From the IMG/VR virus record IMGVR_UViG_3300027770_000025, positions 124,001 through 188,000 of that record: 64,000 nt of DNA. One strand, given 5' to 3'. The notes below the pieces were generated by a model that searched no databases, had not been told where the DNA came from, and saw only the letters and a list, made by a program, of their open reading frames with translations. Within the stretch, counting starts at the first letter, position 1. Each line of letters opens with the position of its first letter. This document shows positions 1,991-58,522 of this stretch, one piece after another. The translations under genes and the position numbers were made by a program.

Positions 1991-2560
1991 ATGAGGTCTA
2001 TAACACCATTTGATAATTTTAAAGCTACCATTAACGAGGAAACTGCGGTTAATCTGGTTGGCTATACTAAGAGTGATGTTGAAACCGCATTCCGTAGTAT
2101 AGAAGATGATCTTAGTGATTATTATTCTATTGATGAGGGTAACACGAGTATATCCCTTGAATGGGATGTGAAGTATGGATCATCACTTGAGGTTGAATGC
2201 TTGATTAATAGTATTGAATTTGATTTTAATCATTCAGGATTCTCCGGAGCTCTTATGAGAAACTTATCGCAGGATCCAGATTCAACAGGACCTAGATTCA
2301 GCAAGTCTGAAATAGAAAGAGCAATAGGGGAAGTACATTATAATGCAGTATTCCAGGAGAATATTGATGTAGATTCAAGGGATTTTTCTACCAGTATATC
2401 CGTGGATCAGGATAGGAATTCAACCGAGCTTACAGTTACCGGAGAAATAGATGAAGACTCTGTTGATTTATCTGATGCTGATATAGATACGGATGAAATA
2501 TTGGAGAAAATAACGGAAGAACTCTACCGAGGTGTTTCTAGAAGAATTGATTATGCATAA
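1991..2560 (+). CDS. Very acidic hypothetical, probable internal head protein
   Basis: MRSITPFDNFKATINEE; D/E-rich. Confidence 0.7.
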   Translation: MRSITPFDNFKATINEETAVNLVGYTKSDVETAFRSIEDDLSDYYSIDEGNTSISLEWDVKYGSSLEVECLINSIEFDFNHSGFSGALMRNLSQDPDSTGPRFSKSEIERAIGEVHYNAVFQENIDVDSRDFSTSISVDQDRNSTELTVTGEIDEDSVDLSDADIDTDEILEKITEELYRGVSRRIDYA

Positions 2561-5351: not shown

Positions 5352-6242
5352 TTATTTCTTAAAGATTCTGTTGATAAGATGAGTTATTATATTGTGCCTT
5401 TTAATAGTGGTATTAAGAGTATAGTATTTTAAGTGAGCATTATCTGTTGCTACCAAAGCCATTCTCTTTTTATAATTAAGAACAATATAAGGCATAAGAT
5501 TATCTGGACTTATCTCCTCTGTCTCGATTATCTCTGGCTCCATCTCGTACTGGTATATTCCTTCCTGGCCTTCAAAAGTATTAGATCCTATAACTATAGA
5601 CTCGTCATTCCAATGTAGCATTGGATTGATTATCACTGAGAACTTATTTCCAAAAGCACCAACTTTATGTATAAGTCCTGTACTACGATCTAGATCTGGT
5701 TGATTGGGATCGTTATAAACGAATTGGGGTAGATCCATTATTCTAGATCCCATAGCAGGTCCAACCATAATAAAATCAGCATCAGATCTTCTTGTTTTAC
5801 TGGCTATTGAATTAGAGATAGAAATTATTTTTCCAAATAGATCAGAATCTTCTTTTACCCTAAATTTAGGCTCATAGCCAAACCATTTGTTAGCTTTAAA
5901 AACTATGGTTGACCATCCGATCTTTTCGTTAACAGACCCAGCATACCTAATCATATTATAGATAAGCTTATCCTGCTCCCTTTTATCCTGTTCCTCAATT
6001 TCTGACATTAACATAGCCTTAGGATCTACTGAATGTAGCTTTTCTAGATCTGCTATCTGTTCTTTAGTAACTTTTGATTTAATCATGTAAGTTTCTAACT
6101 GAAAAATCTTTCTTAGGGTCTTCATAGAAAGGGTTCCAGTTCCTTCTGAGTCTTTCTCGGGGGTTTCTGATGTTAGGTAGAATATCTCTCCCGAACTTTT
6201 ATCTGTCTTATTCCAACAGATTCTATTTTTGATTTCTTGCAT
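5352..6242 (-). CDS. Protein whose C-terminal two-thirds resemble the C-terminal part of T4 gp23/gp24-type capsid protein
   Basis: TRRSDADFIMVGP..GAFGNKFSVIINP..IVIGS..GIYQY..SPDNLMPYIVLNYKKRMALV parallels the gp23 pattern RRG.GNFII...G.LGGRY.VYIDP...VGY..AG.YY...DP..FQP.IGF.TRYG. Confidence 0.55.
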   Translation of the reverse strand: MQEIKNRICWNKTDKSSGEIFYLTSETPEKDSEGTGTLSMKTLRKIFQLETYMIKSKVTKEQIADLEKLHSVDPKAMLMSEIEEQDKREQDKLIYNMIRYAGSVNEKIGWSTIVFKANKWFGYEPKFRVKEDSDLFGKIISISNSIASKTRRSDADFIMVGPAMGSRIMDLPQFVYNDPNQPDLDRSTGLIHKVGAFGNKFSVIINPMLHWNDESIVIGSNTFEGQEGIYQYEMEPEIIETEEISPDNLMPYIVLNYKKRMALVATDNAHLKYYTLNTTIKRHNIITHLINRIFKK

Positions 6243-13225: not shown

Positions 13226-14311
13226 ATGACTAATATATTAGATTTTACATCCTTTATTAACGAAGCTGAAAATGTTTACTCTGGAGGAGGCGATCCATAT
13301 TCATATAAGGTGATTAACGGGGAATGGTGGACAAAAGGTCCTCAGATTCCAAATTGGAAAAGTATAGGTGACAACGTAAGAGCCACCCAGATACTAGATA
13401 CAAGATATCCAGGTACAAGAGGAAATGTGGGTATTCCAAATCCTACCCAAGTTTCATCTATATACCAAAGCAATACATCTAATCAATATAATCCGCAAAC
13501 ATCAGCTATAACTCAGACATCTAAGGACATTATGGTTTGTTCCCATGCTGCTAGATGGGATGGCCCAGGGGGAACGAAAGTTTTTAACTCAATTAAGAAT
13601 TTTGAACTAAATGTTAAGAACGGGACAGATATGATAGAAGTTGATATTCAGATCACAGCAGACGGTGTTCCTGTTTTATATCACGACGGAACATTGGATG
13701 CTAGAACTTCAGCTAAAGGTAAAATTCAGAATAAAAATTGGGCCGAGGTAAAGAACATATCATACGACGAGGATCCTAAAGAGAAGATACCTTCATTAGC
13801 AGAAGCAGTTAGAATACTCAAAACTAGCAATAAAACTAAATTACAGTTGGATAAGTGTGATGCTTCAGAGCTTGCTATTATTCACAAATTAGGTCTACTT
13901 AAAGGTATAGAGAACAGAGTTATTGCGAAGGGAACTTCGTACACCCCACCGGCGATAATTAGAAGTATGGGAATCCAATGGATGCCAATAATACCCGGAA
14001 ATATGGTTGGTTCTATAACGGATCAAAAAAATGCAGATTCCGTTGTTGCTAAATGCTCTCCGGGATATCTTGAATATCAATTTAGCGATTCAGATACTTA
14101 TGTAACTAATGGGTATCTTTCAGATGCTCTAAGAGCTAGAGGCGTTATGCCTTTAGTTGTAGCTGTAGGCGGAACAGATAAGACCAACGGAAAATCTTTC
14201 AGAGGAGACGGAGATTCTGCATGGAATAAAATGATAACACAGATTAATCCTAGTGTTATTATGACAAATAGCCCAAAGAGATTAAGAGATAAAATAAATT
14301 CTACCAGATAA
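13226..14311 (+). CDS. Glycerophosphodiester phosphodiesterase (GDPD) domain protein with capsid-targeting-like N-terminus
   Basis: GTDMIEVDIQITADGVPVLYHDGTLD; MTNILDFTSFINE; GATATATA at 13212-13219. Confidence 0.8.
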   Translation: MTNILDFTSFINEAENVYSGGGDPYSYKVINGEWWTKGPQIPNWKSIGDNVRATQILDTRYPGTRGNVGIPNPTQVSSIYQSNTSNQYNPQTSAITQTSKDIMVCSHAARWDGPGGTKVFNSIKNFELNVKNGTDMIEVDIQITADGVPVLYHDGTLDARTSAKGKIQNKNWAEVKNISYDEDPKEKIPSLAEAVRILKTSNKTKLQLDKCDASELAIIHKLGLLKGIENRVIAKGTSYTPPAIIRSMGIQWMPIIPGNMVGSITDQKNADSVVAKCSPGYLEYQFSDSDTYVTNGYLSDALRARGVMPLVVAVGGTDKTNGKSFRGDGDSAWNKMITQINPSVIMTNSPKRLRDKINSTR

Positions 14312-23898: not shown

Positions 23899-24498
23899 TT
23901 AAGCTACATTAACGTTTTCTGGCTTAGATTTAGCCGTTAAATCGTTTTTGGAATAAAAATATGTTTTCCCAGCATAATTCCAGAAAAAAGCATTGTTACT
24001 TTTGTTACTTTGTCTCTCTATGGGTTTAGCTGCTCCACCACTTTTTGGTTTATCAGCTAAAAACTCAGTTCTAGACTGAACGTGTTTACCCGCTTCGTTG
24101 GATAGTTTTACGTCCTTTTGAGCCAATATGGAGTTGTTGATAGCAAGGGTAGCTTTATTTCTATCTACTTTCTTTGTTTTCATGTATACTATTATAGCCT
24201 TGTCCTTGGAGTTTATTGAATTCCAATCCGCTCCTCTCTTCTTTCCAATGCTAACAGGCTCATATTGGCCTTTATAAAGAATTATTTCCTTAATTGTTTT
24301 TCCGTAAGGTTTCTTAGGAACTGCTAATCTATTATAAATCGATTGTGCTGTATCTGCCATAGCCTGCTTTTGATCTGAAAAATTCTCACATGCCATTATA
24401 GTTATTAAAGTCCAATACTCCGAATTATCTATTGCACCTGGTGTATTAGACTTCTCGTTGAGTTCGTTAAATTGATTAAATTCTAATACATTTATCAT
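23899..24498 (-). CDS. SleB/Hydrolase_2-like cell wall hydrolase with capsid-targeting-like N-terminus
   Basis: ACE..MADTAQSIYNR..YGKTIKEIILYKGQYEP; start MINVLEFNQFNELNE at 24498. Confidence 0.65.
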   Translation of the reverse strand: MINVLEFNQFNELNEKSNTPGAIDNSEYWTLITIMACENFSDQKQAMADTAQSIYNRLAVPKKPYGKTIKEIILYKGQYEPVSIGKKRGADWNSINSKDKAIIVYMKTKKVDRNKATLAINNSILAQKDVKLSNEAGKHVQSRTEFLADKPKSGGAAKPIERQSNKSNNAFFWNYAGKTYFYSKNDLTAKSKPENVNVA

Positions 24499-30596: not shown

Positions 30597-30863
30597 ATGA
30601 AAGTTTTCACCAAAATAGAAGAGTTTTTGGCAACTAAGCCCCAAACGGCACCTGGTCAGCCAACTACAAGGCCTGGAACTACCCCAGGAACGAGACCTAC
30701 TCCTTCAAGACCAAGTCCAATCAGAAGGGATAAACCAGCTGTTGACCCAGCTCCTAAAGCTAAAGCATCTGCCGTTGTTGATAGATTTATGGTGGAACTT
30801 AAAAAGGCTAAGGCACCTATAAAATTTAACATCTCAAAATTAAAAGACAGATATGAATCTTAA
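30597..30863 (+). CDS. Pro/Thr-rich small protein, probable head-associated
   Basis: MKVFTKIEEF at 30597; GATATATA at 30569-30576. Confidence 0.7.
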   Translation: MKVFTKIEEFLATKPQTAPGQPTTRPGTTPGTRPTPSRPSPIRRDKPAVDPAPKAKASAVVDRFMVELKKAKAPIKFNISKLKDRYES

Positions 30864-32271
30864 ATCATTTACACAGTTAGTAGACGAAGCCTCATTAAAG
30901 GATAATCCAGGAATACCTGGCGAAGGCGGAAAAGAAGGGGATTACCTTGCAAAAGTTGAAGGTAGAGCCAAAGAAAGAATTGATGCTCTCCAAAGAAGAC
31001 ATGGAGCAGATATCCCTAGATTCATGTCACTTGTTTCTAGGACAAAACAAATCCAATCAGGAAAAGAGAAAGAGCTAGAAAAGCTTGCAGAGGACTCAAT
31101 CAGATTATATTACGGTTCTATTCTAGAGGAGGTCACGCTAAACATTAAGTTTGAGAAGGACGATGAGATTAAGAAGTCTATGGAGAAGGTTCAAGCAGAA
31201 CCCCCTGAAATGCCACAACTTAAAGAGCTTAAGGATGCTAATATCATTTCAGAAATCCAAAAAAGAAAAATAGCAAACAACATCACCCAAGGGGAAGCTA
31301 AGAACACTAAGCTAATACTAAATCTACCTGAGGTTAGAGACGGTTTAATTAGAATACTAGGACAAGAGCAAGGTACAGAGTATAAAGATCTACTTAATAA
31401 GATCACAGAAATCGCTGGATTCTTTGATTGGAAAATCCCAATGGAAGTTCAGTTGGAGATGTGGACAAGAGATAAATCAGGATTTAGTGGATCAGTAACC
31501 GTTGAATGGAACACTGACAAAGAGGAAGATTCAGAAGAACTTGCACAGGAGATTCTTGGTGAATTAGAAGACGACACAGAAATACCAGAAGAGACTGAAG
31601 AACTATTCTCACAAACACAGCCTACTATTAATGCTTTAGGTACTGACTTTGCCATGTTACTTCATGAGGCAGTTAAAGGTATCTATGAACTTATAGCTGC
31701 AGTGGGTATTCCTGATGATGAAGAAACAGCAGAAACAGTTATAATGAACACCGATTCATTAGCAGACGAGATCGAAGATCTTAGATATGGACCAGAAATT
31801 GCAGCAGATCTCAGAGATCTTGTTAACTCGTTTCCCGAATTTGAGAGCATTCCTAATTTAAGAGAACATGTTTTCGGTAAGATGATGGCAATGGAAGCTA
31901 AGGATTTCCTTGAGCTTATGTACATGATACTTATTGAGGATCCTAAGGCTAAGCCAATTGTACAGGAGTTCATTGACGAGATTGCAGAAGAGATTGGTAA
32001 ATACGAGCTTGGTCAGGCAGGAATAGATAATGACGACGACTACGAGCCAGCGGAAACACCAGGTAGAGCACCAGCACAGGCTGGACAGGAAGAGGTTGAT
32101 TACTCTGAACTTACAAGAAGAGAGATTGAGAGATTGATCGATGCTGCTCTAGATGTTAAAGACTTTGATAGGGTTAGGGATCTTTCTAAGTACCTAAAAG
32201 AGTCAAAACAACAAGAAATCTCAGAAAAACTTCACAAAGAAATGGGTTACCCATCAAATTTAGAAGAATGA
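30853..32271 (+). CDS. Acidic helical hypothetical protein, probable virion protein
   Basis: MNLKSFTQLVDE; 472-aa ORF. Confidence 0.75.
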   Translation: MNLKSFTQLVDEASLKDNPGIPGEGGKEGDYLAKVEGRAKERIDALQRRHGADIPRFMSLVSRTKQIQSGKEKELEKLAEDSIRLYYGSILEEVTLNIKFEKDDEIKKSMEKVQAEPPEMPQLKELKDANIISEIQKRKIANNITQGEAKNTKLILNLPEVRDGLIRILGQEQGTEYKDLLNKITEIAGFFDWKIPMEVQLEMWTRDKSGFSGSVTVEWNTDKEEDSEELAQEILGELEDDTEIPEETEELFSQTQPTINALGTDFAMLLHEAVKGIYELIAAVGIPDDEETAETVIMNTDSLADEIEDLRYGPEIAADLRDLVNSFPEFESIPNLREHVFGKMMAMEAKDFLELMYMILIEDPKAKPIVQEFIDEIAEEIGKYELGQAGIDNDDDYEPAETPGRAPAQAGQEEVDYSELTRREIERLIDAALDVKDFDRVRDLSKYLKESKQQEISEKLHKEMGYPSNLEE

Positions 32272-32369
32272 GATAGATATATAGTAAAACTAATAAATAA
32301 TATGAAAAATAATATGAAAAATAACAAACCAGTATTTGAGAGCTTTAATGAATTCATTAAGTTCATTTA
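32271..32369 (+). repeat. Copy 1 of late promoter + targeting-peptide head (copy 2 at 34475-34568)
   Basis: 30-nt identity (32271-32300/34475-34504) and 44-nt identity (32326-32369/34525-34568). Confidence 0.95.
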
Positions 32370-33675
32370 TGAAGCAGATCAATTAAACGAAGGAGAAACA
32401 ACAGGTTACGCAGGTAAGTTATCTGCTATTCTATCTGGAGGTATGAAACTCCAAGGACAGAATAAGACTTTTACCGAAACTCTAGTTACTGAATATCTTA
32501 ACAAATATTACAATGCTAGCGTGCCAGGAACTAAGGAGATGGCAGATACGCTAATACAAGTCTTAAGTGATGCTTTTGATACGCTTAACAATAAAGTAAT
32601 AAGAACTACACCTGGTGTTGTCTCAAAAACAATACTACCAACAACTTACGAATATTTAACCGACGGTGTGGTTAAAGCGGAAGGACATTGTAATCTAGAG
32701 ACTACTTTTGAATACACCGGCTATGATGATAAGGGAAATTTACAAGGAGGTCTAGAAGGTAGTTACACAATTGGAGATAGAGTAGATGAAACACAAACGT
32801 TACCCTTGTCATATCTTTTAGCAGCTGTTAATGCTCATAATTTTAACGCATTTGCAGAACTGGTTGACATGGCAGCGGGATATAAAAAAGGGGATACTAT
32901 AGTAAATTATGGGGACAAAGCCGATCTGAAGGGGTATCTAAAATGGTCTACTGGAACAAGTAATGAGAATAAAAGATTTTTCCAAATGGATTCCGAATCT
33001 CTTGGTGGTAATATCATTCAATTTACTGATTACAAACCTAAAGGAACCGCACCTGGTTGGGGATGGCAATTCCCTATTTACGTAGCTTCTTTTATTACCG
33101 CAGGTGGGGGTAGTCTTGTAGATGCTTCAACGTATGACGAAGTTATTCAGCCAGCAGGAAATTCGGTAGAGGTTTCTGAAAAGGAATATAATGCTCCACC
33201 CGAAGCTAAATTCTTTGACGCAAACGAGGTAACAATCTCTGAAGATGGTAAAGCATCATTAAATGCTATACTTTCCTCATTTAACTCTATTGATAAAATT
33301 TTAGTTAACGGTGGTGCTTCAAGCTCAAAAACTGATAGAGAAGGAGGAAACGAACAACTTGCTAAAGATAGACAAGCAGCTGGTATTACAGAATTAAATG
33401 CTCTTAAAGAATCAGGAGTACTTCAACTTAAAGATACAGTAATTGAAGCGGGAACAGCTAAAGTTCAGGATGCAGCAGAAAAAAGTGATCCTACAAAACA
33501 GCAAGTTTCTTTTATTATTTCAGGTAAGATTAAATCAACTAAAGTTGTAGAAACCAAACCAGTTACAATTCAAAGGGTTGAGACGATAAAAGGAGATGCT
33601 GTTCAATTTACTGAATACGTATTTAACATTATGGTTAATGCAGAGCCTAACACTAAAACTCTAACAGAAGCTTAA
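32302..33675 (+). CDS. Probable virion protein with degenerate OmpA-like C-terminal domain (cassette 1)
   Basis: KPVFESFNEFIKFIYE; FDANEVTISEDGKASLNAIL..ILVNGGAS..GNEQLAKDR. Confidence 0.65.
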   Translation: MKNNMKNNKPVFESFNEFIKFIYEADQLNEGETTGYAGKLSAILSGGMKLQGQNKTFTETLVTEYLNKYYNASVPGTKEMADTLIQVLSDAFDTLNNKVIRTTPGVVSKTILPTTYEYLTDGVVKAEGHCNLETTFEYTGYDDKGNLQGGLEGSYTIGDRVDETQTLPLSYLLAAVNAHNFNAFAELVDMAAGYKKGDTIVNYGDKADLKGYLKWSTGTSNENKRFFQMDSESLGGNIIQFTDYKPKGTAPGWGWQFPIYVASFITAGGGSLVDASTYDEVIQPAGNSVEVSEKEYNAPPEAKFFDANEVTISEDGKASLNAILSSFNSIDKILVNGGASSSKTDREGGNEQLAKDRQAAGITELNALKESGVLQLKDTVIEAGTAKVQDAAEKSDPTKQQVSFIISGKIKSTKVVETKPVTIQRVETIKGDAVQFTEYVFNIMVNAEPNTKTLTEA

Positions 33676-34474: not shown

Positions 34475-34568
34475 AGATAGATATATAGTAAAACTAATAA
34501 ATAACAAATAACATGACAAACAATAAACCAGTATTTGAGAGCTTTAATGAATTCATTAAGTTCATTTA
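34475..34568 (+). repeat. Copy 2 of late promoter + targeting-peptide head
   Basis: See 32271-32369. Confidence 0.95.
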
Positions 34569-35751
34569 CAGCGATGCAATTTACGAATCGGTAAAAATCG
34601 AAAATCTTTCCGACTTGCAAAGAACCCTAGGAAGCTTGGGTATGGATAAAGTAGGAAAAAATGCACTGACCGAGATTGAAAGCTTAGCAGAGCAATCTGG
34701 GGCTATATTTTCTGCAGCGGATCTAAGCCAAATTGGGGTAGTCCTAGGAAAGTTAACAATCCCTGACGTAATCTCTATTACAGATGTAAATGTAGATGTA
34801 GAAAAATTCTACTACGACAATTTAATGGGCGGAGCGGTTAAAACACAAAAGGGTGATAAAGTAGGTCTTGCCCAATTCTTAACCCAAGCAAATAAGGAGA
34901 ATTTAAAACCTTTGAGTGGAAAGATCCCAAATATAAACCTAAAGAAGAAGAAGTTTGATTTAGACGAGAATGGAAAATTTGTACCAGGATCAGGTTTAAT
35001 TGGCCAATATTTACCGGTTCAGATAGAGGGTACACTAGATCTGAAGAAATGGAAATTTGATGACCCTGTTAAGAATTCTGTGATTGCTTTACCAGATTAT
35101 GATCCTTCGGGAACAAGTATTAGTTCCAGCGAACCAGTATCTAAGGAAACTCGAGCATATATGTACGGCGAAATACATGTTGCGTATGTGCTTTATCATC
35201 CAACCTTTGTAGGTAATAATGGTCAGCCATACACATCTAAAAAGGTGGAAACATACGTTCGTCCAGTACCTACAGTTACGGAGAAATTAAACCCTATCGT
35301 TGTTCAAGAAGAGCTTCCGCTTTTCGTAGTAAATACTGCAAATCTAACGGAAGAAGGAAAAATTGCAATCATGCAAGCACTATCAAACGTAACAACAGCT
35401 AAATCTATTTCAATCAGAGGCGGTGCTTCTCAAGAAGGAACTCCGGAAAGAAATAAGGAACTTTGTAAACTACGATCTGAAGCAGTGGCTGAATTTCTTA
35501 AACCTACTTTCCCTGATGCTGCTATCACTGCAGAAGCAGAAGGTGAGATACAACCTAAAACACCAGATACAGACGAGAAAACAAGAAAAACTTTCAGAAA
35601 GATAATTATGGACGTTGATGGTACAACATTGGTTAAACAGCCAGGAACAAAGGATGAAACTATTACAACAATTAACACCGTTAGCAAGAGAGCACAAAAG
35701 GTTACTATTGCAGCAACTATAATTACTATAACCGCTAAGTTTAATGAATAA
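34513..35751 (+). CDS. Probable virion protein with OmpA-like C-terminal domain (cassette 2)
   Basis: FVVNTANLTEEGK..ISIRGGASQEGTPERNKELCKLRSEAVAEFL..GEIQP matches the OmpA_C pattern. Confidence 0.75.
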   Translation: MTNNKPVFESFNEFIKFIYSDAIYESVKIENLSDLQRTLGSLGMDKVGKNALTEIESLAEQSGAIFSAADLSQIGVVLGKLTIPDVISITDVNVDVEKFYYDNLMGGAVKTQKGDKVGLAQFLTQANKENLKPLSGKIPNINLKKKKFDLDENGKFVPGSGLIGQYLPVQIEGTLDLKKWKFDDPVKNSVIALPDYDPSGTSISSSEPVSKETRAYMYGEIHVAYVLYHPTFVGNNGQPYTSKKVETYVRPVPTVTEKLNPIVVQEELPLFVVNTANLTEEGKIAIMQALSNVTTAKSISIRGGASQEGTPERNKELCKLRSEAVAEFLKPTFPDAAITAEAEGEIQPKTPDTDEKTRKTFRKIIMDVDGTTLVKQPGTKDETITTINTVSKRAQKVTIAATIITITAKFNE

Positions 35752-43515: not shown

Positions 43516-44514
43516 ATGAAAAAACACGCAAATGTTAAACAAAACCACACAGCAGAAACGCATTCAGACGAAACTTCAGGTGGTGCATCGATTGATACTA
43601 CAACAACTGCATCGGCAGGAGTAGAAACAGGAGATGAAAATGCATCAATTGGTATCGAAGTGTCTGCTAAAACTGGAACTGAAGCATCAGTTGATGGTGG
43701 ATTAGATGGAAATAATGTATATGTAGAAGCAAACTATTCAGATACAACCGAGGTTCATGTTACAGTAGAAGGCCAAGCTAATGCTGAAGGATTTGGAGTT
43801 GGCGGTTCTGTAGATGCTTATGCAAAAACAGGAAACGAAGCTAGCATTGAAGTGCGAGCAGGAGACGAAGGTGTAGTAGCAAATGGGAGTGTATCAGCAG
43901 GATCATCTGTTGGTGTTGACGGAGAAGGAACTGCTGATTTAAGAGAAGGTTCTGTTACAGCTGGTGCAGGTGTGTCAGTCGGAGAACAAGTTGGAATTGG
44001 TGGTGGAGGAGAAGCTACATATGTAGATGGCGTTGCAACTGTTGGTGTTAGTGGTGAAGTTGCAGTTTTACTTGGTGTTGATGTTGATTTAAGTGTAAGT
44101 GTTGATACAAACCAAATAGCAGAAGATGCTGCTGCTGCTCAAAAACTTGCTGAAGAACAAGCTGCTGAGGCAAAACGTTTATCTGATGAAGCTGATAGAG
44201 TATTAGCTGAACAAGCTGCTGCTGCACAAAAACTTGCTGAAGAGCAAGCTGCTGAAGCTAACAGAGTATTAGCTGAACAAGCTGCTGCTGCACAAAGAGA
44301 AACTGAAAGACAAGCAAAAGCTGCTCAGGAAGAATTTGATAGACAAGCAAGAGCTGCTCAAGAAGAATTTGATAGACAAGCAAGAGCTGCTCAAGAAGCT
44401 GCCGAAGCTGCACAAAGAGAAACAGAAAGGGTAGCTAGAGAAACTCAAGACGCTTTAAATCAAGCAGCAGAAGATGCTAAAAAATCAAAATGGAATCCTA
44501 AAAATTGGTTCTAA
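43516..44514 (+). CDS. G/V/A/S-rich beta region + repetitive coiled coil
   Basis: AGAGVSVGEQVG-type strands followed by AAAQKLAEEQAAEA and AAQEEFDRQAR repeats. Confidence 0.75.
   Translation: MKKHANVKQNHTAETHSDETSGGASIDTTTTASAGVETGDENASIGIEVSAKTGTEASVDGGLDGNNVYVEANYSDTTEVHVTVEGQANAEGFGVGGSVDAYAKTGNEASIEVRAGDEGVVANGSVSAGSSVGVDGEGTADLREGSVTAGAGVSVGEQVGIGGGGEATYVDGVATVGVSGEVAVLLGVDVDLSVSVDTNQIAEDAAAAQKLAEEQAAEAKRLSDEADRVLAEQAAAAQKLAEEQAAEANRVLAEQAAAAQRETERQAKAAQEEFDRQARAAQEEFDRQARAAQEAAEAAQRETERVARETQDALNQAAEDAKKSKWNPKNWF
44125..44430 (+). repeat. Imperfect coding repeats including a 33-bp unit (AAQEEFDRQAR)
   Basis: Recurrent GCTGCTCAAGAAGAATTTGATAGACAAGCAAGA and GAGTATTAGCTGAACAAGCTGCTGCTGCACAAA; boundaries approximate. 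Confidence 0.8.
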
Positions 44515-46048: not shown

Positions 46049-46459
46049 ATGGAAACACCCTTCGTACCTAACCACCTACATTTAATTGTTAAGGGATATT
46101 TTAAAACTCCCCCTAGGGAAGAGAAAATCTTAAATGACTGGCTTAGAAGGCTAGTTGAAAAAGTAAGAATGGTGGTTGTCGCCGGACCCTCGTCCATTTA
46201 TGTTGATGAACCAGGAAATGAAGGGATTACAGGAACAGTTACCCTAGCAACTTCACACGCTGCTATTCACGTTTGGGATCGCGCTGTTCCTGCAATGTTT
46301 CAATTTGATATCTACTCCTGCTCAGAGTTCACCGCAGAGGAGGTTTTAGAGCATCTAGATGAGTTTGGTCTTATTTCATGTGAATACATTCGGATTGACA
46401 GAAACGGAGAAAGCATGACAGTTATAGAGCAAAAGAAGATAGGATATACAGCATCTTAA
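46049..46459 (+). CDS. speD: Pyruvoyl-dependent AdoMet decarboxylase-family proenzyme
   Basis: HLHLIV, GITGTVTLATSHAAIHVW, FDIYSC. Confidence 0.8.
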   Translation: METPFVPNHLHLIVKGYFKTPPREEKILNDWLRRLVEKVRMVVVAGPSSIYVDEPGNEGITGTVTLATSHAAIHVWDRAVPAMFQFDIYSCSEFTAEEVLEHLDEFGLISCEYIRIDRNGESMTVIEQKKIGYTAS

Positions 46460-46519: not shown

Positions 46520-46804
46520 TTATACTAATAAAAATTCGTTAATCATTTTGGCGATTTTTTCTTTGGAGTGATTGCCAGATACCTTTGAAGCTTCCTCTCC
46601 GTCTTTTAAAAAAATAAGTGTCGGAATTCCTCTAATGTTATACTTTTGTGTGAGTTCAGGCTCGTTGTCAACGTTCACCTTTTTAATCTCAACATTAGAA
46701 CCCTCCACATTATATTCAGCCATTAGTGACTCGATTGCTGGCCCCATTGATTTGCAGGGCTCGCACCATTCAGCGTAAAAATCTAATACTTTTACCTTTG
46801 CCAT
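46520..46804 (-). CDS. trxA: Thioredoxin
   Basis: DFYAEWCEPCK, IRGIPTL. Confidence 0.92.
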   Translation of the reverse strand: MAKVKVLDFYAEWCEPCKSMGPAIESLMAEYNVEGSNVEIKKVNVDNEPELTQKYNIRGIPTLIFLKDGEEASKVSGNHSKEKIAKMINEFLLV

Positions 46805-46811
46805 TTTTTAT

Positions 46812-48242
46812 TTATCGTTTATATTTCCTTGCTAATTCCTGTGCATGATTCAAGTCCCTAACACCAAATTTCTGGGATTGCTGCAAATACCCATCAGCAA
46901 ATGATCTAGGCTTATTTAAAGCCATTGAATTCCATCCATTATAATTTGTACTGTATTTCCAAATCTGGTCTGTAGTTGCTATAGATCCATTAGGTCTTTC
47001 CGTGTATAAATAACCACCTACATTACCTCCTGTTCGATCTGCTCCATGAGCGCAGTGTACTAATGTGTTACCACTTTTAATAATTTCATTTACCTTGTCC
47101 TGATCTCTAGTAGATGAAAGCTTATAGAATTTACATCCTAGCTGTTTACATAATGCTTCCTCTTCTGCGATTGAAACAGATTGATCTTTTCTTTGATGTC
47201 TTCCATCCTTTCCATCCCCGTTAAATCGTATAACATTCTTTATTCCGTATTTAGGGTACATCTGTTTCATTACCTCGAGAGGAAATTGTGCACTTCTGTA
47301 ATTTGTTCCCTTTCCGTCAGGAATCAAATGAAAATTATACTCTCTAGAAATAGCTGCATCATCCTGTTCTGGATTAGTCCCCACCACAGCAGGAGTAAAT
47401 ATTATATTGTTATTAGGTATCGGAGATTGGTTATTAACTATCTGAGATGTATTATTGGCATCTGCGCCAGATTTCTTAGGAGCATTCTTAGACCTCATGT
47501 TTGGGTTTTCGCTATCCAATGTGTCAATGGAAATCTGATAAGCTGGATTAAAATCTGCTCCAGTTAGCTCATACCATCTTGATTGACTATCTTTTTTAGC
47601 TAACCAATGATCGCCTTCTACCTTATATTTATAAGGATCCTTCGGTCTAGAAATAATTTGACTCGCTGTAGAGTTTCCTTTACTTAGATCTGTTGGTGGA
47701 ATGTATCCAGATTGGTTTGTTACCAACCCGTCAATTTCCTTTGCTATAGTATCATATACAGGTAGATTAACATGGGGGTTTGTTACTTTCCCGATTGGTG
47801 GTTCAATAACGGTAACGCCTTCACCTTTAAATCTGTCATAGTATTGCTTAACCTTATCAGTGGTTACTGATACATTTCCGCCCCAACCCCATGATCCCTG
47901 AACAACAGACAATTTTGCCTGCGGAAAAACTCTTCTTAATTCAGAAACTAGACCTTTGATGTCGTCATTGGGGCTAAATCCCCCATTCGTTCCGATGTTT
48001 ATTACAACATCTTTAACTTTAGTGTCAACTGGATGCTTAGAAACAGCCCCATTCAGCCATTTAACGCCCATTCCACTTTTCCATAAGTTTTCTTCCGATC
48101 CAGTAGTTCCTAACATTGTAAGGGTCTTGGATCTCCTGAATATGTTTGGAGTACAAGAATCACCTATTACGATGCTTGTCCCATCACTTTTAGACTCGTT
48201 TAAACTTATAAAAGATTTAAAATCATGTATTCTATTTTTCAT
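46812..48242 (-). CDS. Multidomain probable virion protein: SGNH-like + linker module + Cys-based (CX5R) phosphatase
   Basis: MKNRIHDFKSFISLNE; IGDS and IGTNG blocks; VHCAHGADRTG; GATATATA 4 nt upstream. Confidence 0.75.
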   Translation of the reverse strand: MKNRIHDFKSFISLNESKSDGTSIVIGDSCTPNIFRRSKTLTMLGTTGSEENLWKSGMGVKWLNGAVSKHPVDTKVKDVVINIGTNGGFSPNDDIKGLVSELRRVFPQAKLSVVQGSWGWGGNVSVTTDKVKQYYDRFKGEGVTVIEPPIGKVTNPHVNLPVYDTIAKEIDGLVTNQSGYIPPTDLSKGNSTASQIISRPKDPYKYKVEGDHWLAKKDSQSRWYELTGADFNPAYQISIDTLDSENPNMRSKNAPKKSGADANNTSQIVNNQSPIPNNNIIFTPAVVGTNPEQDDAAISREYNFHLIPDGKGTNYRSAQFPLEVMKQMYPKYGIKNVIRFNGDGKDGRHQRKDQSVSIAEEEALCKQLGCKFYKLSSTRDQDKVNEIIKSGNTLVHCAHGADRTGGNVGGYLYTERPNGSIATTDQIWKYSTNYNGWNSMALNKPRSFADGYLQQSQKFGVRDLNHAQELARKYKR

Positions 48243-48273
48243 GAATTATATATCCCATTTTATAATACATTTA

Positions 48274-48840
48274 TCAGATTAGGTATTCTAAAAGCTTATT
48301 TTTTATTCCCGATTGTTTAATTCCTTCATTTGACCTGGGGGTGAGCACAAAGTTTTTTAACCCGTGTCCCTGGTTATATTCAGGTGACATGTTTAAATCA
48401 TCTATAGCAACCCAATGGGTAATCTCTGGATGTAGTTCAAGATATTTTTGTATTTCTAATATCCTCTCTTTTTCTTTCCAGCCTTTCCAATGATAAAGAC
48501 CAGCAGCTCCCTCATCGAAGTCGTAGAGATCGGGAGTTGTTGCTATAGGTTTCTTTATAATACCTTGGGATTCGTAATACTCTCCAAGTCCTTCTAGATC
48601 AGCATGCAGCTTCCAGTCAGACGAGACCACTATTTCTGCCCCCGTTTCTTGCAGCACCTCATTTAATATCAATACTGCTTTTTTATCAAAGTCATCGAAT
48701 CTCACAGTAACTGGAGCATCTTTTAACTCCCTGCTAGATTCTGGATTTTCTCTCCGATATCTAGACCATTTTTTGCTTCGCCCACCCCAATTACTCGAGA
48801 GACAAATTACTCCGTCATTATCCAAGAACAAGATTTTCAT
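48274..48840 (-). CDS. HAD-domain protein, Swiss-Army-Knife RNA-repair-like
   Basis: LFLDNDGVI, IVVSSDWK, WVAIDDL. Confidence 0.82.
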   Translation of the reverse strand: MKILFLDNDGVICLSSNWGGRSKKWSRYRRENPESSRELKDAPVTVRFDDFDKKAVLILNEVLQETGAEIVVSSDWKLHADLEGLGEYYESQGIIKKPIATTPDLYDFDEGAAGLYHWKGWKEKERILEIQKYLELHPEITHWVAIDDLNMSPEYNQGHGLKNFVLTPRSNEGIKQSGIKNKLLEYLI

Positions 48841-49832: not shown

Positions 49833-50048
49833 ATGAAACCTAGCAAAGAATATTTAGATCATATAGCTAAAAGACTCGAAGCAATGAATCCCAATATAGT
49901 TAACGGGGTTAACATTATACAGGAGCCATATAAAATGCCAAGCTTCGAGGACCAATTAGGTCAAACAGCAATGGCTTATTTAGCAAACAAAAAAAATCAG
50001 GAACACGCAGCTCCTGATCCTCTTTTTCCTGATAGAAACTCCTACTGA
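49833..50048 (+). CDS. Small hypothetical protein
   Basis: ORF with a variant late motif (GTATATAG) just upstream. Confidence 0.55.
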   Translation: MKPSKEYLDHIAKRLEAMNPNIVNGVNIIQEPYKMPSFEDQLGQTAMAYLANKKNQEHAAPDPLFPDRNSY

Positions 50049-51730
50049 TTCGGTTTCCTGGTAATCACATAATTCCCTATACAAAGTGCATGCAGATTTC
50101 TTCCCCAGAATGTTCTGATCGCATGATAGGGCGATTCAACTATAGGCTCGTCAGGTCCATTAAAACTAGTATTGAGAACAAGGGGTATACCACTTATTGA
50201 TTCGAATTCGGAAATCAATTTATGATAATATAGGTTGGATTCTTTAGTTACTGATTGATATCTTGAAGTTCCGTCTATATGAACCACTGATGGTATTTTA
50301 GATTTCCACTCTTCTCTAACCCTCGCGGTCACCATCATATAAGGGGAATAAACATCAAGATCAAAAACATCCTTTTGTTTTTCGAAAAGAACCGAGGGAG
50401 CAAATGGTCTGTACCATTCCCTTAATTTAATGTCATGATTAATATGGTCTTTCATCCATGAGCATTTAGGTGAAGCTATTATCGACCGGTTACCTAAAGC
50501 TCTTGGACCAATTTCAGATCCTCCTTGGAATAGACCAATAACTTTATTTTGATTAATTAACGAAGCTACATTTTTAATTTGTTCGGATTTATCCCGATAT
50601 AGCTCAATATTAACCAGGTCACCAAATTCAAACTCTGATGAAGCTTTATCTATGTCATCTTTTATCTGGAGATCCGAATACGATCTCCCCATGTATGGAT
50701 TAAGGTACTTTCCTTTATGTGCTCCCCCGCTTTTAACGTAACCCCACCAAGCACAACCTAATGGTATACCGCTATCATCTGAACACGGAACGAAATACTG
50801 ATCTTTATATAAACCAGATTTTATGATCATCTCGTTCGTGTTGCAGTTTAGAAAAGATCCTCCGGCAACGCAAACATTCTCGGATCCAGTTAATCTTTTA
50901 GCCATTTCAACCAGATGAATTGAATTCTGTTCCTGATCCCTTTGATATAATCCAGCAACATTTGCTTTGGAATAGAAGTCAGATTTGTAATCAACCTCTG
51001 GCATTATCTTAACCGAAGGTATAAAGATGTCATACTCTCTTAAAGTTGTATGTGAAGGGATTTGGTTAACCCACTCCTGATCTGCATATGAAGCTAGTCC
51101 CATAAGTTTCCCCGCTGGCCATGAATGTGTTTTTGTATCATATACAAGTTGGAGAGATCCCTTCGTGTATTGTTCGCCTATTGATGTTTCCGAATTTTCG
51201 TCTATAAGCATTGGATACTTTATCAACTTCTTGTAAACCTCTCGATCTTCTTCCTGAGAGAACTTATAAATAGTTATACCTTCTGCATATTCATAATCCT
51301 CTGTACCTGGCCATTCCTGATTAAACCACTTTAGAGCATTGCTATTCCTTTTCAAAACGCTACCCATAGCATCAGCAACAACAACCGCAGCTTCAGAAAA
51401 GCCAGAGCTATAAAAGGTTGAATACGCATGGGCCAAGTGATGAGGAATGAAATGAAGTCTGCTTTTACCGATTCCAAAGGTCTTCTCGAAAGAATCAGCT
51501 ACAACATCATCATCCTCTACCGTATCAAATGTCCATCTGTCAACGTCTGAATACTCAAAACCGAGATATTTCAGGCAGTAATCTATAGATTCCACGGGTA
51601 AACCAGTGCTATATGCGCCATCATGTTTCACTCTAGTGATCCTTTCCTGTGATATACCCACTTTAACCTCTCCGTCTACTATGATTACACAGCCTTTATC
51701 GTGTCCTACTGAAAATCCTAAGCTTACCAT
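50042..51730 (-). CDS. Carbamoyltransferase, NodU/CmcH family
   Basis: HD..ERITRVKH, HHLAHA, AGKLMGLASY, AGGSFLNC, DDSG, EIGPRALGNRS, REWYRPFAP, VHIDGTSRYQ, LNTSFN. Confidence 0.92.
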   Translation of the reverse strand: MVSLGFSVGHDKGCVIIVDGEVKVGISQERITRVKHDGAYSTGLPVESIDYCLKYLGFEYSDVDRWTFDTVEDDDVVADSFEKTFGIGKSRLHFIPHHLAHAYSTFYSSGFSEAAVVVADAMGSVLKRNSNALKWFNQEWPGTEDYEYAEGITIYKFSQEEDREVYKKLIKYPMLIDENSETSIGEQYTKGSLQLVYDTKTHSWPAGKLMGLASYADQEWVNQIPSHTTLREYDIFIPSVKIMPEVDYKSDFYSKANVAGLYQRDQEQNSIHLVEMAKRLTGSENVCVAGGSFLNCNTNEMIIKSGLYKDQYFVPCSDDSGIPLGCAWWGYVKSGGAHKGKYLNPYMGRSYSDLQIKDDIDKASSEFEFGDLVNIELYRDKSEQIKNVASLINQNKVIGLFQGGSEIGPRALGNRSIIASPKCSWMKDHINHDIKLREWYRPFAPSVLFEKQKDVFDLDVYSPYMMVTARVREEWKSKIPSVVHIDGTSRYQSVTKESNLYYHKLISEFESISGIPLVLNTSFNGPDEPIVESPYHAIRTFWGRNLHALCIGNYVITRKPNQ

Positions 51731-58343: not shown

Positions 58344-58451
58344 GATTTTTATTTTAATAAATTTTAATAGTGGAGTATTATGTTATGTCTACAAATCTCT
58401 TACCAACTTCGTAGTATTTTTCCAAAACCCACTCTAGCAATTTCTCTTTTG

Positions 58452-58522
58452 TAGCCAGGACAGGAATCGAACCTGTGTACTCCGACTTAAAAGGTCGGGC
58501 TTTACCATTAAGCCACCTGGCT
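58452..58522 (-). tRNA. trnK: tRNA-Lys(UUU), 71 nt, CCA not encoded
   Basis: Hand fold: AGCCAGG/CCTGGCT acceptor, GCTT/AAGC D stem, CCGAC/GTCGG with CTTTTAA loop, ACAGG-TTCGATT-CCTGT T arm. Confidence 0.85.

What the first reader, a model, noticed from the sequence alone, without database searches (positions are those of the whole stretch)
46812..48242. Capsid-tagged SGNH-like + CX5R phosphatase fusion
Seen: targeting peptide, GDS and GTN blocks without a clear DxxH, the shared DPYxYKV module, and an intact HCAHGADRTG loop. Inference: an injected phosphatase acting at once on host phosphoproteins, phosphorylated signalling molecules or RNA/lipid phosphates; kinase-based defences would be plausible targets.
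Basis: partly seen in the sequence, partly recalled or inferred. Interest (0 to 1): 0.6.

Follow-up and report, generated by a model that had tools for sequence, protein, structure and literature searches.

The report
Virion-tagged esterase–phosphatase aimed at the envelope
A 348-kb phage related to Lak megaphages encodes a two-enzyme protein (an acetyl-esterase-like domain and a cysteine phosphatase) with a T4-style head-targeting peptide, and its relatives point to the host cell wall and periplasm as the target, not host phosphoproteins.

Summary
Window 46812-48242 (-) is an intact 476-aa ORF with four parts: a 16-residue N-terminal peptide ending L-N-E, a compact SGNH domain (GDS, GTN, N-P-H; no DxxH), a small DPYKYKV module shared with a GDPD paralogue in the window, and a PTP-fold domain with the loop HCAHGADRTG.

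The capsid-tag reading is well supported but inferred. The genome encodes a T4-type prohead protease and a gp23-like capsid protein. The peptide fits that protease's L/I-x-E cleavage rule. The capsid protein's own propeptide junction carries the same motif. About 30-55 genes of the genome carry such peptides. The gene also has the GATATATA promoter-like motif found upstream of the portal, protease, sheath and fibre genes.

The proposed targets (host phosphoproteins, kinase-based defences) are not supported. In several hundred relatives both domains are fused, in either order, to peptidoglycan-binding domains, lysozymes, amidases, M23, NlpC/P60, SLT and VanY domains, GDPD and a baseplate spike domain.

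Best reading: a head-packaged, protease-processed ejection enzyme that removes ester substituents (O-acetyl, phosphate) in the cell envelope at infection. The substrate is unknown. No virion-delivered PTP phosphatase was found in the literature searched.

The parts
46812..48242 (-). Whole gene, 476 aa (P0001): leader, SGNH domain, B module, linker, PTP-fold phosphatase
   Evidence: 186 homologues
48247..48254 (-). GATATATA promoter-like motif, ending 4 nt before the ATG. No Shine-Dalgarno sequence is evident
   Evidence: The same motif lies upstream of the sheath, portal, protease, head-closure and fibre genes. It is kept at the same place in orthologous contigs L034/L035 and L039
48195..48242 (-). 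N-terminal peptide, residues 1-16, F8-x-x-F11-x-x-L14-N-E16. Predicted head-targeting propeptide, cut after E16
   Evidence: F8 and E16 invariant, position 14 L/I/V in 25 orthologues. Low-confidence helix in AF2. T4 rule L/I-x-E (PMC9026906)
47709..48185 (-). Domain A, residues 20-178: compact SGNH hydrolase. Putative catalytic residues S29 (48156-48158), G57, N86 (47985-47987), H157 (47772-47774); D171 nearly invariant
   Evidence: AF2. VIA Z 13.0 to the OatA C-terminal domain and 12.9 to sialate O-acetylesterase. Foldseek. Invariance
47460..47654 (-). B module, residues 197-261 (DPYKYKV...): small beta-hairpin + helix module, portable, function unknown
   Evidence: It follows the leader directly in B-C proteins and in the GDPD paralogue
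47373..47459 (-). Low-complexity, disordered linker, residues 262-290 (N/S/P-rich)
   Evidence: pLDDT <40. Variable in length and sequence among orthologues
46815..47372 (-). Domain C, residues 291-476: PTP/DSP-fold cysteine phosphatase. Motifs NYRSAQ (314-319), R339, N341, D346
   Evidence: AF2 pLDDT 95.5. VIA Z 12.5-13.1 to PFA-DSP1, Tk-PTP, PTPMT1, TpbA and Siw14. Foldseek. PDB profile hit to TpbA, E 0.0067
47028..47057 (-). P-loop HCAHGADRTG (C397 nucleophile, R403, invariant D402 at loop position 6)
   Evidence: HCxxGxDR type as in MptpB and myotubularin (PMC3091653)
13226..14311 (+). Paralogue in design, 361 aa: leader (MTNILDFTSFINE) + B module + GDPD phosphodiesterase. Also preceded by GATATATA at -14

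Best explanation
The gene encodes a virion-packaged ejection enzyme that acts on the host cell envelope.

Inferred steps, in order:
1. It is transcribed with the structural genes from a GATATATA-type promoter.
2. The 16-residue N-terminal peptide takes the protein into the prohead core, as the T4 capsid targeting sequence does.
3. The T4-type prohead protease cuts after L14-N15-E16, leaving a mature protein that starts at S17.
4. At infection the protein leaves the head with the DNA and works in the periplasm or cell-wall layer.

In the envelope, the SGNH domain (S29/H157, oxyanion G57/N86) would remove acyl, most likely O-acetyl, esters. The PTP-fold domain (C397 thiolate, R403, P-loop D402 as likely general acid) would remove phosphate monoesters. 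The small B module would hold the enzyme on its polymer.

The most likely purpose is to strip substituents that block the phage's own muralytic enzymes or its DNA channel. Examples are 6-O-acetyl or phosphate-linked groups on peptidoglycan or other envelope glycans.

Shown: the ORF, the folds, the conserved catalytic residues, the fusion network, the protease and capsid genes, and the motif statistics. Inferred: packaging, cleavage, ejection, compartment and substrates.
For: Tag and packaging:
- The leader ends in L/I/V-x-E with E16 invariant. T4 gp21 cuts after L/I-x-E, and the T4 CTS is a 10-residue N-terminal peptide with key residues at 4, 7, 8 and 10 (PMC9026906; PMC8442874).
- The genome has Peptidase_S77 (32.9 bits; PHROG head maturation protease, E 2e-37) next to a gp23-like capsid gene (138 bits).
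- The capsid protein's propeptide junction reads Y-x-x-Y-x-S-L-N-E|S, like the leader.
- Leader-like N-termini occur in 56 of 388 crude genes. The rate at internal Met is 3.9%, and shuffled N-termini give a mean of 18 and a maximum of 29.
- GATATATA occurs 77 times in the genome. 59 copies lie within 90 nt upstream of genes, including the sheath, portal, protease, head-closure and fibre genes and 14 of 29 strict leader genes. It sits at -12 here and in orthologous contigs.

Envelope target:
- Domain C is fused to PG_binding_1 (mostly weak or sub-threshold in the 'leader-PGbinding-C' class), GH24 lysozyme, SLT, Amidase_2, GDSL and Phage_base_V.
- Domain A is fused to VanY + tail lysozyme, Amidase_2, NlpC/P60 + CHAP, PG_binding_1 and GDPD.
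- A tally over 80 further representatives gave PG_binding_1 in 6, Phage_lysozyme2 in 4, Amidase_2 in 4, M23 in 3, plus GDPD, SLT, VanY and M15.
- Domains A and C occur together in both orders: A-B-C 30, C-A 11, A-C 5.
- Many short A-only relatives begin with signal-peptide-like N-termini directly before the GDS block.
- Other leader-tagged proteins of this genome include SLT and PG_binding_1 proteins.
- Structural neighbours fit: the peptidoglycan O-acetyltransferase OatA C-domain, sialate O-acetylesterase and CE2 for A; periplasmic TpbA for C (PMC4409338).
Against: - There is no proteomic or expression evidence.
- T4 internal proteins are thought to reach the cytoplasm. The leader-tagged set here also includes cytoplasm-type enzymes: adenylate kinase, a RimK-like ATP-grasp and a P-loop kinase. 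The tag therefore does not specify the compartment.
- Large polyvalent virion proteins can combine domains that act in different compartments, so fusion does not prove a shared site.
- The PG_binding_1 hits in the abundant 'X-C' class are just below Pfam's cut-off (about 17-22 bits against 23).
- The target has N155 where most relatives have D/E beside the catalytic His.
- A thiol phosphatase may be inactivated in an oxidising periplasm.
- No known envelope substrate for a PTP-fold enzyme in phage entry was found in the literature.
Confidence: 0.45

Rival explanations
1. Membrane-lipid attack. The ejected enzyme acts on envelope lipids rather than glycans. The SGNH domain would be a (lyso)phospholipase or lipid deacylase. 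The PTP domain would be an MptpB/myotubularin-like atypical lipid phosphatase acting on phospholipid or lipid A head groups. The GDPD paralogue would handle the glycerophosphodiester products. The effect would be to loosen the membrane locally for DNA entry, or to scavenge phosphate.
For: - The P-loop HCAHGADR is of the HCxxGxDR type. The Asp before the Arg is kept in every resolvable family P-loop. In MptpB (HCFAGKDR) and myotubularins (HCSDGWDR) this Asp is the catalytic acid, and those enzymes take phosphoinositides (PMC3091653).
- There are sub-threshold Pfam hits to Y_phosphatase3, the PDB profile search weakly hits PtpB 1ywf (E 0.024), and PTPMT1 is among the tied structural neighbours (Z 12.9).
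- E. coli TesA/lysophospholipase L1 is among the SGNH neighbours (Z 11.4).
- A GDPD paralogue shares the leader and the B module.
Against: - The fusion partners are peptidoglycan enzymes and binders, not lipid-binding domains.
- The top SGNH neighbours are acetyl-specific carbohydrate enzymes.
- The Lys at P-loop position 5 that MptpB uses for phosphoinositide binding is Ala here (PMC3091653).
- Pfam PF13350 stays below its cut-off (14.8 against 22.2 bits).
Confidence: 0.2
2. The phosphatase is injected into the cytoplasm and dephosphorylates host phosphoproteins or signalling molecules, for example to disarm kinase-based defence systems.
For: - The tag evidence is the same as above.
- T4 internal proteins and Alt enter the cytoplasm and act in host take-over (PMC9026906).
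- The leader-tagged set of this genome includes cytoplasm-type enzymes.
- DSP-fold enzymes such as TpbA, VHZ and Cdc14 are protein phosphatases.
Against: - No relative is fused to or found beside kinase, signalling or defence-related domains in the contexts read.
- Both domains are persistently fused to cell-wall domains and to a baseplate spike domain.
- The loop Asp expected of protein DSPs (D380) is kept in only 42 of 55 sequences, whereas the P-loop Asp is invariant.
- The model gives no role to the covalently linked SGNH esterase.
Confidence: 0.15
3. Not a virion protein. It would be a late-expressed lysis or cell-wall-remodelling accessory enzyme (endolysin helper), and the N-terminal peptide would have another role, such as translation context or regulation.
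For: - Peptidoglycan-related fusion partners are also typical of endolysins.
- The late-type promoter motif would suit lysis genes too.
- AT-rich genomes favour K/N/I/F-rich N-termini.
Against: - The leader has no signal or holin-like features that would take it across the membrane at lysis.
- The invariant E, the L/I/V at -2 and the aromatic spacing exceed composition controls.
- The same motif sits at the capsid protein's maturation site, and head-module genes beside the capsid gene carry it.
- Relatives occur as domains of baseplate-spike and very large tail-lysozyme proteins.
Confidence: 0.08
4. An RNA- or nucleotide-end phosphatase of the 'Swiss-army-knife' RNA-repair kind, working with the neighbouring HAD_SAK_2 gene.
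For: - The neighbour at 48274-48840 is HAD_SAK_2 (E 2.6e-19), and an orthologous contig also has one nearby.
- Some relatives give weak PTP-SAK hits.
- Bacterial PTP-SAK/PTP-NADK clusters are the next structural neighbours in the ESM Atlas.
Against: - The PTP-SAK hits are all below cut-off.
- The HAD gene has no leader and is not adjacent in more distant orthologues.
- Only 1 of 80 representatives carries a nucleic-acid-repair domain (HAD_PNKP).
Confidence: 0.04

Closest known systems
T4 internal proteins (IPI-III, Alt) with the capsid targeting sequence
   Same: Both have a short N-terminal peptide with aromatic residues three apart, followed by L/I-x-E and cleavage by a gp21-type protease. 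Both attach the peptide to diverse cargo, and the phage has gp23-like capsid and gp21-like protease genes.
   Different: The peptide here is 16 residues with two extra residues before the L-x-E. The tagged set is far larger (tens of genes). The cargo here is a two-enzyme envelope-type protein, not a small basic anti-restriction protein. Nothing has been tested experimentally.
Virion-associated peptidoglycan hydrolases, including head-internal ones such as the T7 gp16 transglycosylase domain (own knowledge)
   Same: They are enzymes carried in the particle and released at infection to act on the wall. In this genome SLT and PG_binding_1 proteins carry the same leader. Relatives of both domains are fused to lysozymes, amidases and peptidases.
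   Different: The target has no glycosidase, amidase or peptidase domain. Its chemistry is ester and phosphoester hydrolysis, which is not a described activity of such proteins.
TpbA of Pseudomonas aeruginosa (periplasmic dual-specificity phosphatase; PDB 4r0s, 2m3v)
   Same: It is the best sequence-profile and Foldseek match. It shares the YRSA motif, the HC-x-H-G-x-x-R-T-G loop and the DSP fold, with Z 12.7 over 132 residues. It acts in the periplasm (PMC4409338).
   Different: Identity is about 16-18%. TpbA has a Sec signal and a loop Asp (D105) as acid, and its loop is HCKHGNNR without the P-loop Asp. Its substrate is a bacterial pTyr protein.
MptpB-like atypical lipid phosphatases and myotubularins (HCxxGxDR P-loop)
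   Same: The P-loop pattern matches, with an invariant Asp before the Arg. There are weak Pfam Y_phosphatase3 and PDB 1ywf hits.
   Different: Pfam stays below its cut-off. The Lys at loop position 5 is absent. MptpB is larger and has a lid. No lipid-binding feature was seen.
Carbohydrate O-acetyl SGNH enzymes: OatA C-domain, PatB, sialate O-acetylesterase, CE2 esterases
   Same: All are compact SGNH folds. Z is 13.0 (132 aligned) to OatA-C and 12.9 to sialate esterase. The GDS and GxN blocks match. CE2 also works without the block-V Asp (own knowledge).
   Different: Identity is 13-20%. Many SGNH families are tied within 1 Z unit. The acid is at His-2 in the family and is Asn in this protein. 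The substrate is unknown.

Membership tests
Cysteine-based PTP / dual-specificity phosphatase superfamily | HCX5R(S/T) P-loop | tested here: met
   H396-C-A-H-G-A-D-R-T404 is invariant in 55 of 55 relatives. 108 of 117 C-domain proteins have HCxHGxDR[TS]. Seven of the other nine show HCxxGxDRTG, and two have no resolvable loop.
Cysteine-based PTP / dual-specificity phosphatase superfamily | PTP/DSP alpha-beta fold | tested here: met
   AF2 pLDDT 95.5. VIA Z 12.5-13.1 with 128-135 residues aligned at 2.4-3.2 A to PFA-DSP1, Tk-PTP, PTPMT1, TpbA and Siw14. Foldseek E about 1e-5.
Cysteine-based PTP / dual-specificity phosphatase superfamily | General-acid Asp | tested here: inconclusive
   The loop Asp D380 is kept in 42 of 55 sequences. 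The P-loop Asp D402 and D346 are invariant.
Cysteine-based PTP / dual-specificity phosphatase superfamily | Curated Pfam score (DSPc, Y_phosphatase3) | tested here: not met
   12.5 bits against 33.5 and 14.8 against 22.2. Relatives reach E 6e-7 and 3e-6.
MptpB-like atypical lipid phosphatases | HCxxGxDR loop with catalytic Asp, and Lys at position 5 for phosphoinositide binding | tested here: inconclusive
   The Asp is present and invariant. Position 5 is Ala, not Lys (PMC3091653).
SGNH hydrolases | Block I GDS nucleophile, block II Gly, block III GxN | tested here: met
   G27-D-S29, G57 and G84-T-N86 are invariant in 49 of 49. The assignment of G57 to block II is by position only.
SGNH hydrolases | Block V DxxH | tested here: not met
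   H157 is invariant, but there is no Asp at His-3. The family has D/E at His-2 (44 of 49) and the target has N155.
SGNH hydrolases | SGNH flavodoxin-like fold | tested here: met
   Core pLDDT >90. Z 11.4-13.0 over 132-154 residues to many SGNH enzymes.
T4-type capsid-targeted, protease-processed head proteins | N-terminal peptide ending in L/I-x-E, with aromatic residues upstream | tested here: met
   F8, F11, L14 and E16. E16 is invariant and position 14 is L/I/V in 25 orthologues. The rule is from PMC9026906.
T4-type capsid-targeted, protease-processed head proteins | gp21-type prohead protease and gp23-type capsid protein in the same genome | tested here: met
   Peptidase_S77 at 32.9 bits, Gp23 at 138 bits, PHROG head maturation protease at E 2e-37.
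T4-type capsid-targeted, protease-processed head proteins | Presence in virions, removal of the peptide, ejection | not testable with these tools
   There is no proteome. The complex prediction of protease with leader gave no answer.

The most novel reading that the evidence does not exclude
PTP-fold phosphatases, alone or paired with a compact SGNH esterase, would be a so far unrecognised class of virion-delivered envelope-active enzymes in large aquatic and gut phages. On this reading phosphate-ester removal from cell-wall glycans or envelope lipids is a step in phage entry, alongside the known glycosidase, amidase and peptidase activities. It would be delivered here through a T4-like head-targeting system that tags tens of proteins in a Lak-related jumbo phage.
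Probability: 0.3. Interest if true: 0.75.

Novelty: new variant of a known kind. Interest (0 to 1): 0.6.

Why it matters
If the reading holds, it adds a new chemistry to the phage entry toolkit: phosphoester removal coupled to de-esterification. It would also name a substrate class in the bacterial envelope that phages must clear.

It gives a testable function to a family of several hundred uncharacterised phage proteins. It also shows that T4-style capsid targeting extends, on a much larger scale, to jumbo phages related to the uncultured Lak megaphages. There it can be read from sequence to predict the injected proteome.

The leader plus L-x-E site may also be a usable tag for loading foreign proteins into such capsids, as was done with T4.

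Tried and rejected
- Whole-protein scans left the protein open. Pfam gave only sub-threshold phosphatase hits, PHROGs nothing and PDB sequences nothing.
- blastn and tblastn against 50,697 GenBank phage records found no match. The family is absent from deposited phage genomes, though near-identical records may be hidden by the tool.
- The scan of species-representative genomes found only 6 loci, all on MAG contigs. In the one locus read (L006, Flavobacteriales) the domain A homologue has a TM-anchored N-terminus and lies beside a large mobile-element-like protein.
- The ESM Atlas feature search of the B module gave no usable hit, so the B fold was not identified. It looks like a beta-hairpin plus helix, not the three-helix PG_binding_1 fold.
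- I tested whether the segment that replaces B in three orthologues (P0033, P0045, P0048) is PG_binding_1-like. Only an 11.6-bit match to the GxFGPxT core turned up in P0048, which is suggestive and no more.
- Thioredoxin lies directly downstream here and in a 58%-identical orthologue contig but not in more distant ones. I dropped a functional pairing with the thiol phosphatase.
- Complex prediction of the protease domain with residues 1-34 gave no answer. This is not evidence either way.
I therefore did no read-based work on expression or habitat, did not use read laying, and tried no other route.
- No alternative genetic code was needed. Table 11 gives about 90% coding.
Full report
**What is there**

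Window 46812-48242 (-) is one intact 476-aa ORF, stored as P0001. Its ATG follows an in-frame TAA by one codon. It lies 31 nt after the stop of the upstream HAD_SAK_2 gene.

The window is bases 124001-188000 of a 348,582-bp virus record with 36% G+C, judged complete by CheckV. Table 11 gives about 90% coding, so no other genetic code was considered.

The capsid protein's closest deposited relatives are an uncultured 462-kb phage (LR756500.1, 43% identity) and the Prevotella Lak megaphages (44%). This is therefore a jumbo phage of a Lak-related lineage. A host in Bacteroidota is a guess. The few MAG contigs that carry relatives are from lake and gut samples.

**Anatomy**

BLAST of 120 homologues against the query, and HMMs of each part, show four portable pieces.

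1. *Leader, residues 1-16.* F8 and E16 are invariant, F11 is nearly so, and position 14 is always L, I or V. AF2 gives it as a low-confidence helix.
2. *Domain A, residues 20-178.* G27-D-S29, G57, G84-T-N86 and H157 are invariant in 49 of 49 sequences, and D171 in 48 of 49. There is no Asp at His-3. Most relatives have D/E at His-2; this protein has N155.
   - The model core has pLDDT >90. It aligns best to the S. aureus peptidoglycan O-acetyltransferase OatA C-terminal domain (Z 13.0, 132 residues) and to sialate O-acetylesterase (Z 12.9).
   - CE2/CE3 esterases, PAF acetylhydrolase, PatB and TesA all lie within about 1.6 Z. The fold is certain; the subfamily is not.
3. *B module, residues 197-261 (DPYKYKV...).* It is a beta-hairpin plus helix at pLDDT about 87-90. 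The genome has only two copies: this one and the GDPD paralogue at window 13226-14311, where it follows the leader directly.
4. *Domain C, residues 291-476.* It follows a disordered N/S/P-rich linker. The loop H396-C-A-H-G-A-D-R-T-G-G406 is invariant, as are N314-Y-R-S-A-Q319, R339, N341 and D346.
   - The model (pLDDT 95.5) is a PTP/DSP fold. Z is 12.5-13.1 to AtPFA-DSP1, Tk-PTP, PTPMT1, TpbA, Siw14 and VHZ, all tied.
   - By sequence profile the best solved relative is the periplasmic phosphatase TpbA (E 0.0067).
   - The Asp before the Arg is kept in every resolvable P-loop of the family. This is the HCxxGxDR pattern of MptpB-like atypical lipid phosphatases and myotubularins, where that Asp is the catalytic acid (PMC3091653).
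   - The conventional loop Asp (D380) is kept in only 42 of 55 sequences.

**Is it capsid-tagged?**

The evidence is indirect but comes from several independent sources.

- The genome encodes a T4-type prohead protease (Peptidase_S77, 32.9 bits; PHROG head maturation protease, E 2e-37). It lies directly upstream of a gp23-like major capsid gene (138 bits).
- T4 gp21 cuts after L/I-x-E. The T4 capsid targeting sequence is a 10-residue N-terminal peptide in which residues 4 and 7 matter for targeting and 8 and 10 for processing (PMC9026906; sequence in PMC8442874).
- The leader here has the same logic: two aromatic residues three apart, then L-N-E.
- The capsid protein's own N-terminal extension ends ...Y-C-H-Y-H-S-L-N-E|S-A-G, the same motif at the expected maturation site.
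- Three genes directly downstream of the capsid gene also start with such peptides.
- Genome-wide, a loose pattern matches 56 of 388 crude genes. The rate at internal Met is 3.9%, and shuffled N-termini give a mean of 18 and a maximum of 29. A strict pattern matches 29 genes.
- The octamer GATATATA occurs 77 times in the genome, and 59 copies lie within 90 nt upstream of a gene. The genes include tail sheath, portal, protease, head closure and tail fibre, and 14 of the 29 strict leader genes.
- The octamer sits at -12 before this gene. It is kept at the same place before orthologues that are 58% and 52% identical.

I read this as a late, structural-gene promoter, often giving near-leaderless mRNAs. 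Packaging, cleavage and ejection remain untested. A complex prediction of the protease with the leader gave no answer.

**What does it act on?**

The exhaustive profile search found 819 relatives. Among the 254 sequences in hand the architectures are: A alone 90, C alone 60, A-B 43, A-B-C 30, C-A 11, B-C 10 and A-C 5. The two catalytic domains are therefore joined in both orders, which argues for a shared task.

The other partners are almost all cell-wall domains.

- *Partners of C:* PG_binding_1 (mostly weak or sub-threshold hits just before the phosphatase domain in an abundant 'leader-PGbinding-C' class), GH24 lysozyme, SLT + PG_binding_1 + GDSL, PG_binding_1 + Amidase_2, and the baseplate spike domain Phage_base_V with an intact HCAHGADRT loop.
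- *Partners of A:* VanY + tail lysozyme at the end of 2,300-aa proteins, Amidase_2, NlpC/P60 + CHAP, PG_binding_1 and GDPD.
- *Tally over 80 further representatives:* PG_binding_1 6, Phage_lysozyme2 4, Amidase_2 4, M23 3, GDPD 2, SLT 2, plus VanY, M15 and lysozyme. Only one carried a nucleic-acid-repair domain and none a kinase or signalling domain.
- *Short A-only relatives* often begin with signal-peptide-like N-termini placed exactly where the phage proteins have the leader.
- *In this genome* the leader is also found on an SLT transglycosylase, a PG_binding_1 protein, a weak SleB-like hydrolase, the GDPD paralogue and a weak OmpA-like protein.

Together these place the enzyme in the periplasm or wall layer at the start of infection. 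This is the way T7 delivers a transglycosylase from inside its head (own knowledge).

**Mechanism proposed**

The mature protein (from S17) is released with the DNA. The SGNH domain uses S29/H157 to remove acyl esters. These are most likely O-acetyl esters, because the nearest folds are acetyl-specific carbohydrate enzymes, including peptidoglycan O-acetyl enzymes. The phosphatase uses C397/R403, with D402 as the likely acid, to remove phosphate monoesters. The B module probably binds the polymer.

One attractive version is that both domains, together with the GDPD paralogue, clear the C6 position of MurNAc or similar sites. That would let the phage's glycosidases cut. This step is inference only.

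The P-loop type and the GDPD paralogue keep a lipid-directed version alive (rival 1).

Caveats:
- The tagged set also holds adenylate kinase, a RimK-like ATP-grasp and a P-loop kinase, so the tag does not fix the compartment.
- Polyvalent virion proteins can mix domains with different destinations.
- A thiol enzyme may fare poorly in an oxidising periplasm.

**Comparison and novelty**

The protein works like a T4 internal protein in its delivery and like a virion-associated wall enzyme in its target. Its chemistry, an esterase plus a PTP-fold phosphatase, is not among the described activities of either.

Full-text searches found no paper on virion or ejected phage tyrosine/dual-specificity phosphatases. 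They found none on leader or propeptide systems in Lak-type phages either.

The family has no match in 50,697 deposited phage genomes. It is not a member of any curated Pfam phosphatase family by score.

I rate it a new variant of known kinds, of moderate to good interest. Its proposed targets are not.

**Limits**

Model coordinates could not be inspected, so active-site geometry is argued from conservation only.

Noticed in passing
whole genome G000; in the window e.g. 1991-2560(+), 13226-14311(+), 23899-24498(-), 30853-32271(+), 32302-33675(+), 34513-35751(+): A genome-wide set of about 29 (strict) to 56 (loose) genes begins with M-x(2-7)-Ar-x-x-Ar-...-L/I-x-E peptides. The tagged proteins include an SLT transglycosylase, a PG_binding_1 protein, adenylate kinase, a RimK-like ATP-grasp, a CPT-like P-loop kinase and an LRR protein. 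The predicted injected proteome is therefore very large.
   Followed up: partly
genome-wide; window 48247-48254(-), and upstream of 13226, 32302 and 34513: GATATATA is a promoter-like octamer: 77 copies, 59 of them within 90 nt upstream of genes. There are two spacing classes, about -12/-13 (near-leaderless) and -24 to -40. It precedes the sheath, portal, protease, head-closure and fibre genes.
   Followed up: partly
window 32302-33675(+) and 34513-35751(+): Two nearby genes share almost the same leader (M..NNKPVFESFNEFIKFIY) and nearly identical upstream sequence (AGATAGATATATAGTAAAACTAATAAA). This looks like a recent duplication of a tagged gene. The first has a weak OmpA-like hit.
   Followed up: no
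window 5580-6146(-) (genome 129580-130146): A second, weaker gp23-family match (38.9 bits) lies within a 313-codon open frame far from the head module. It may be a vertex (gp24-like) protein or a diverged capsid paralogue.
   Followed up: no
loci L036-L038 and proteins P0069-P0121: Another phage clade carries PG_binding-like + phosphatase (+ SGNH) proteins behind different conserved leaders (MNLQENIxRIKEVMG..., MKIKITESQLKRIV...LNE). The downstream C39/C70-like peptidase gene has one too. This suggests that parallel tag systems exist in other phage lineages.
   Followed up: partly
window 46520-46804(-): A thioredoxin gene lies 7 nt downstream of the target on the same strand. The pairing is kept in a 58%-identical orthologue contig but not in more distant ones.
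   Followed up: yes
window 48274-48840(-), 46049-46459(+), 50042-51730(-): The neighbours are auxiliary-metabolism-type genes: HAD_SAK_2 phosphatase, S-adenosylmethionine decarboxylase and carbamoyltransferase. None has a leader.
   Followed up: no
window 43516-44514(+): A 332-aa protein has a G/V/E/A-rich first half and a tail of near-repeats rich in A, Q and E (AEQAAAAQKLAEEQAAEA...). It has no Pfam match.
   Followed up: no
window 58451-58522(-): tRNA-Lys (anticodon TTT), the only tRNA in the window.
   Followed up: no
locus L006 3141-4456: On a Flavobacteriales MAG contig, a classic SGNH gene and a domain-A homologue sit side by side. Both have an N-terminal membrane anchor followed by a very basic stretch. 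They lie next to a 1,258-aa polyvalent-looking protein, probably a mobile element or phage.
   Followed up: no
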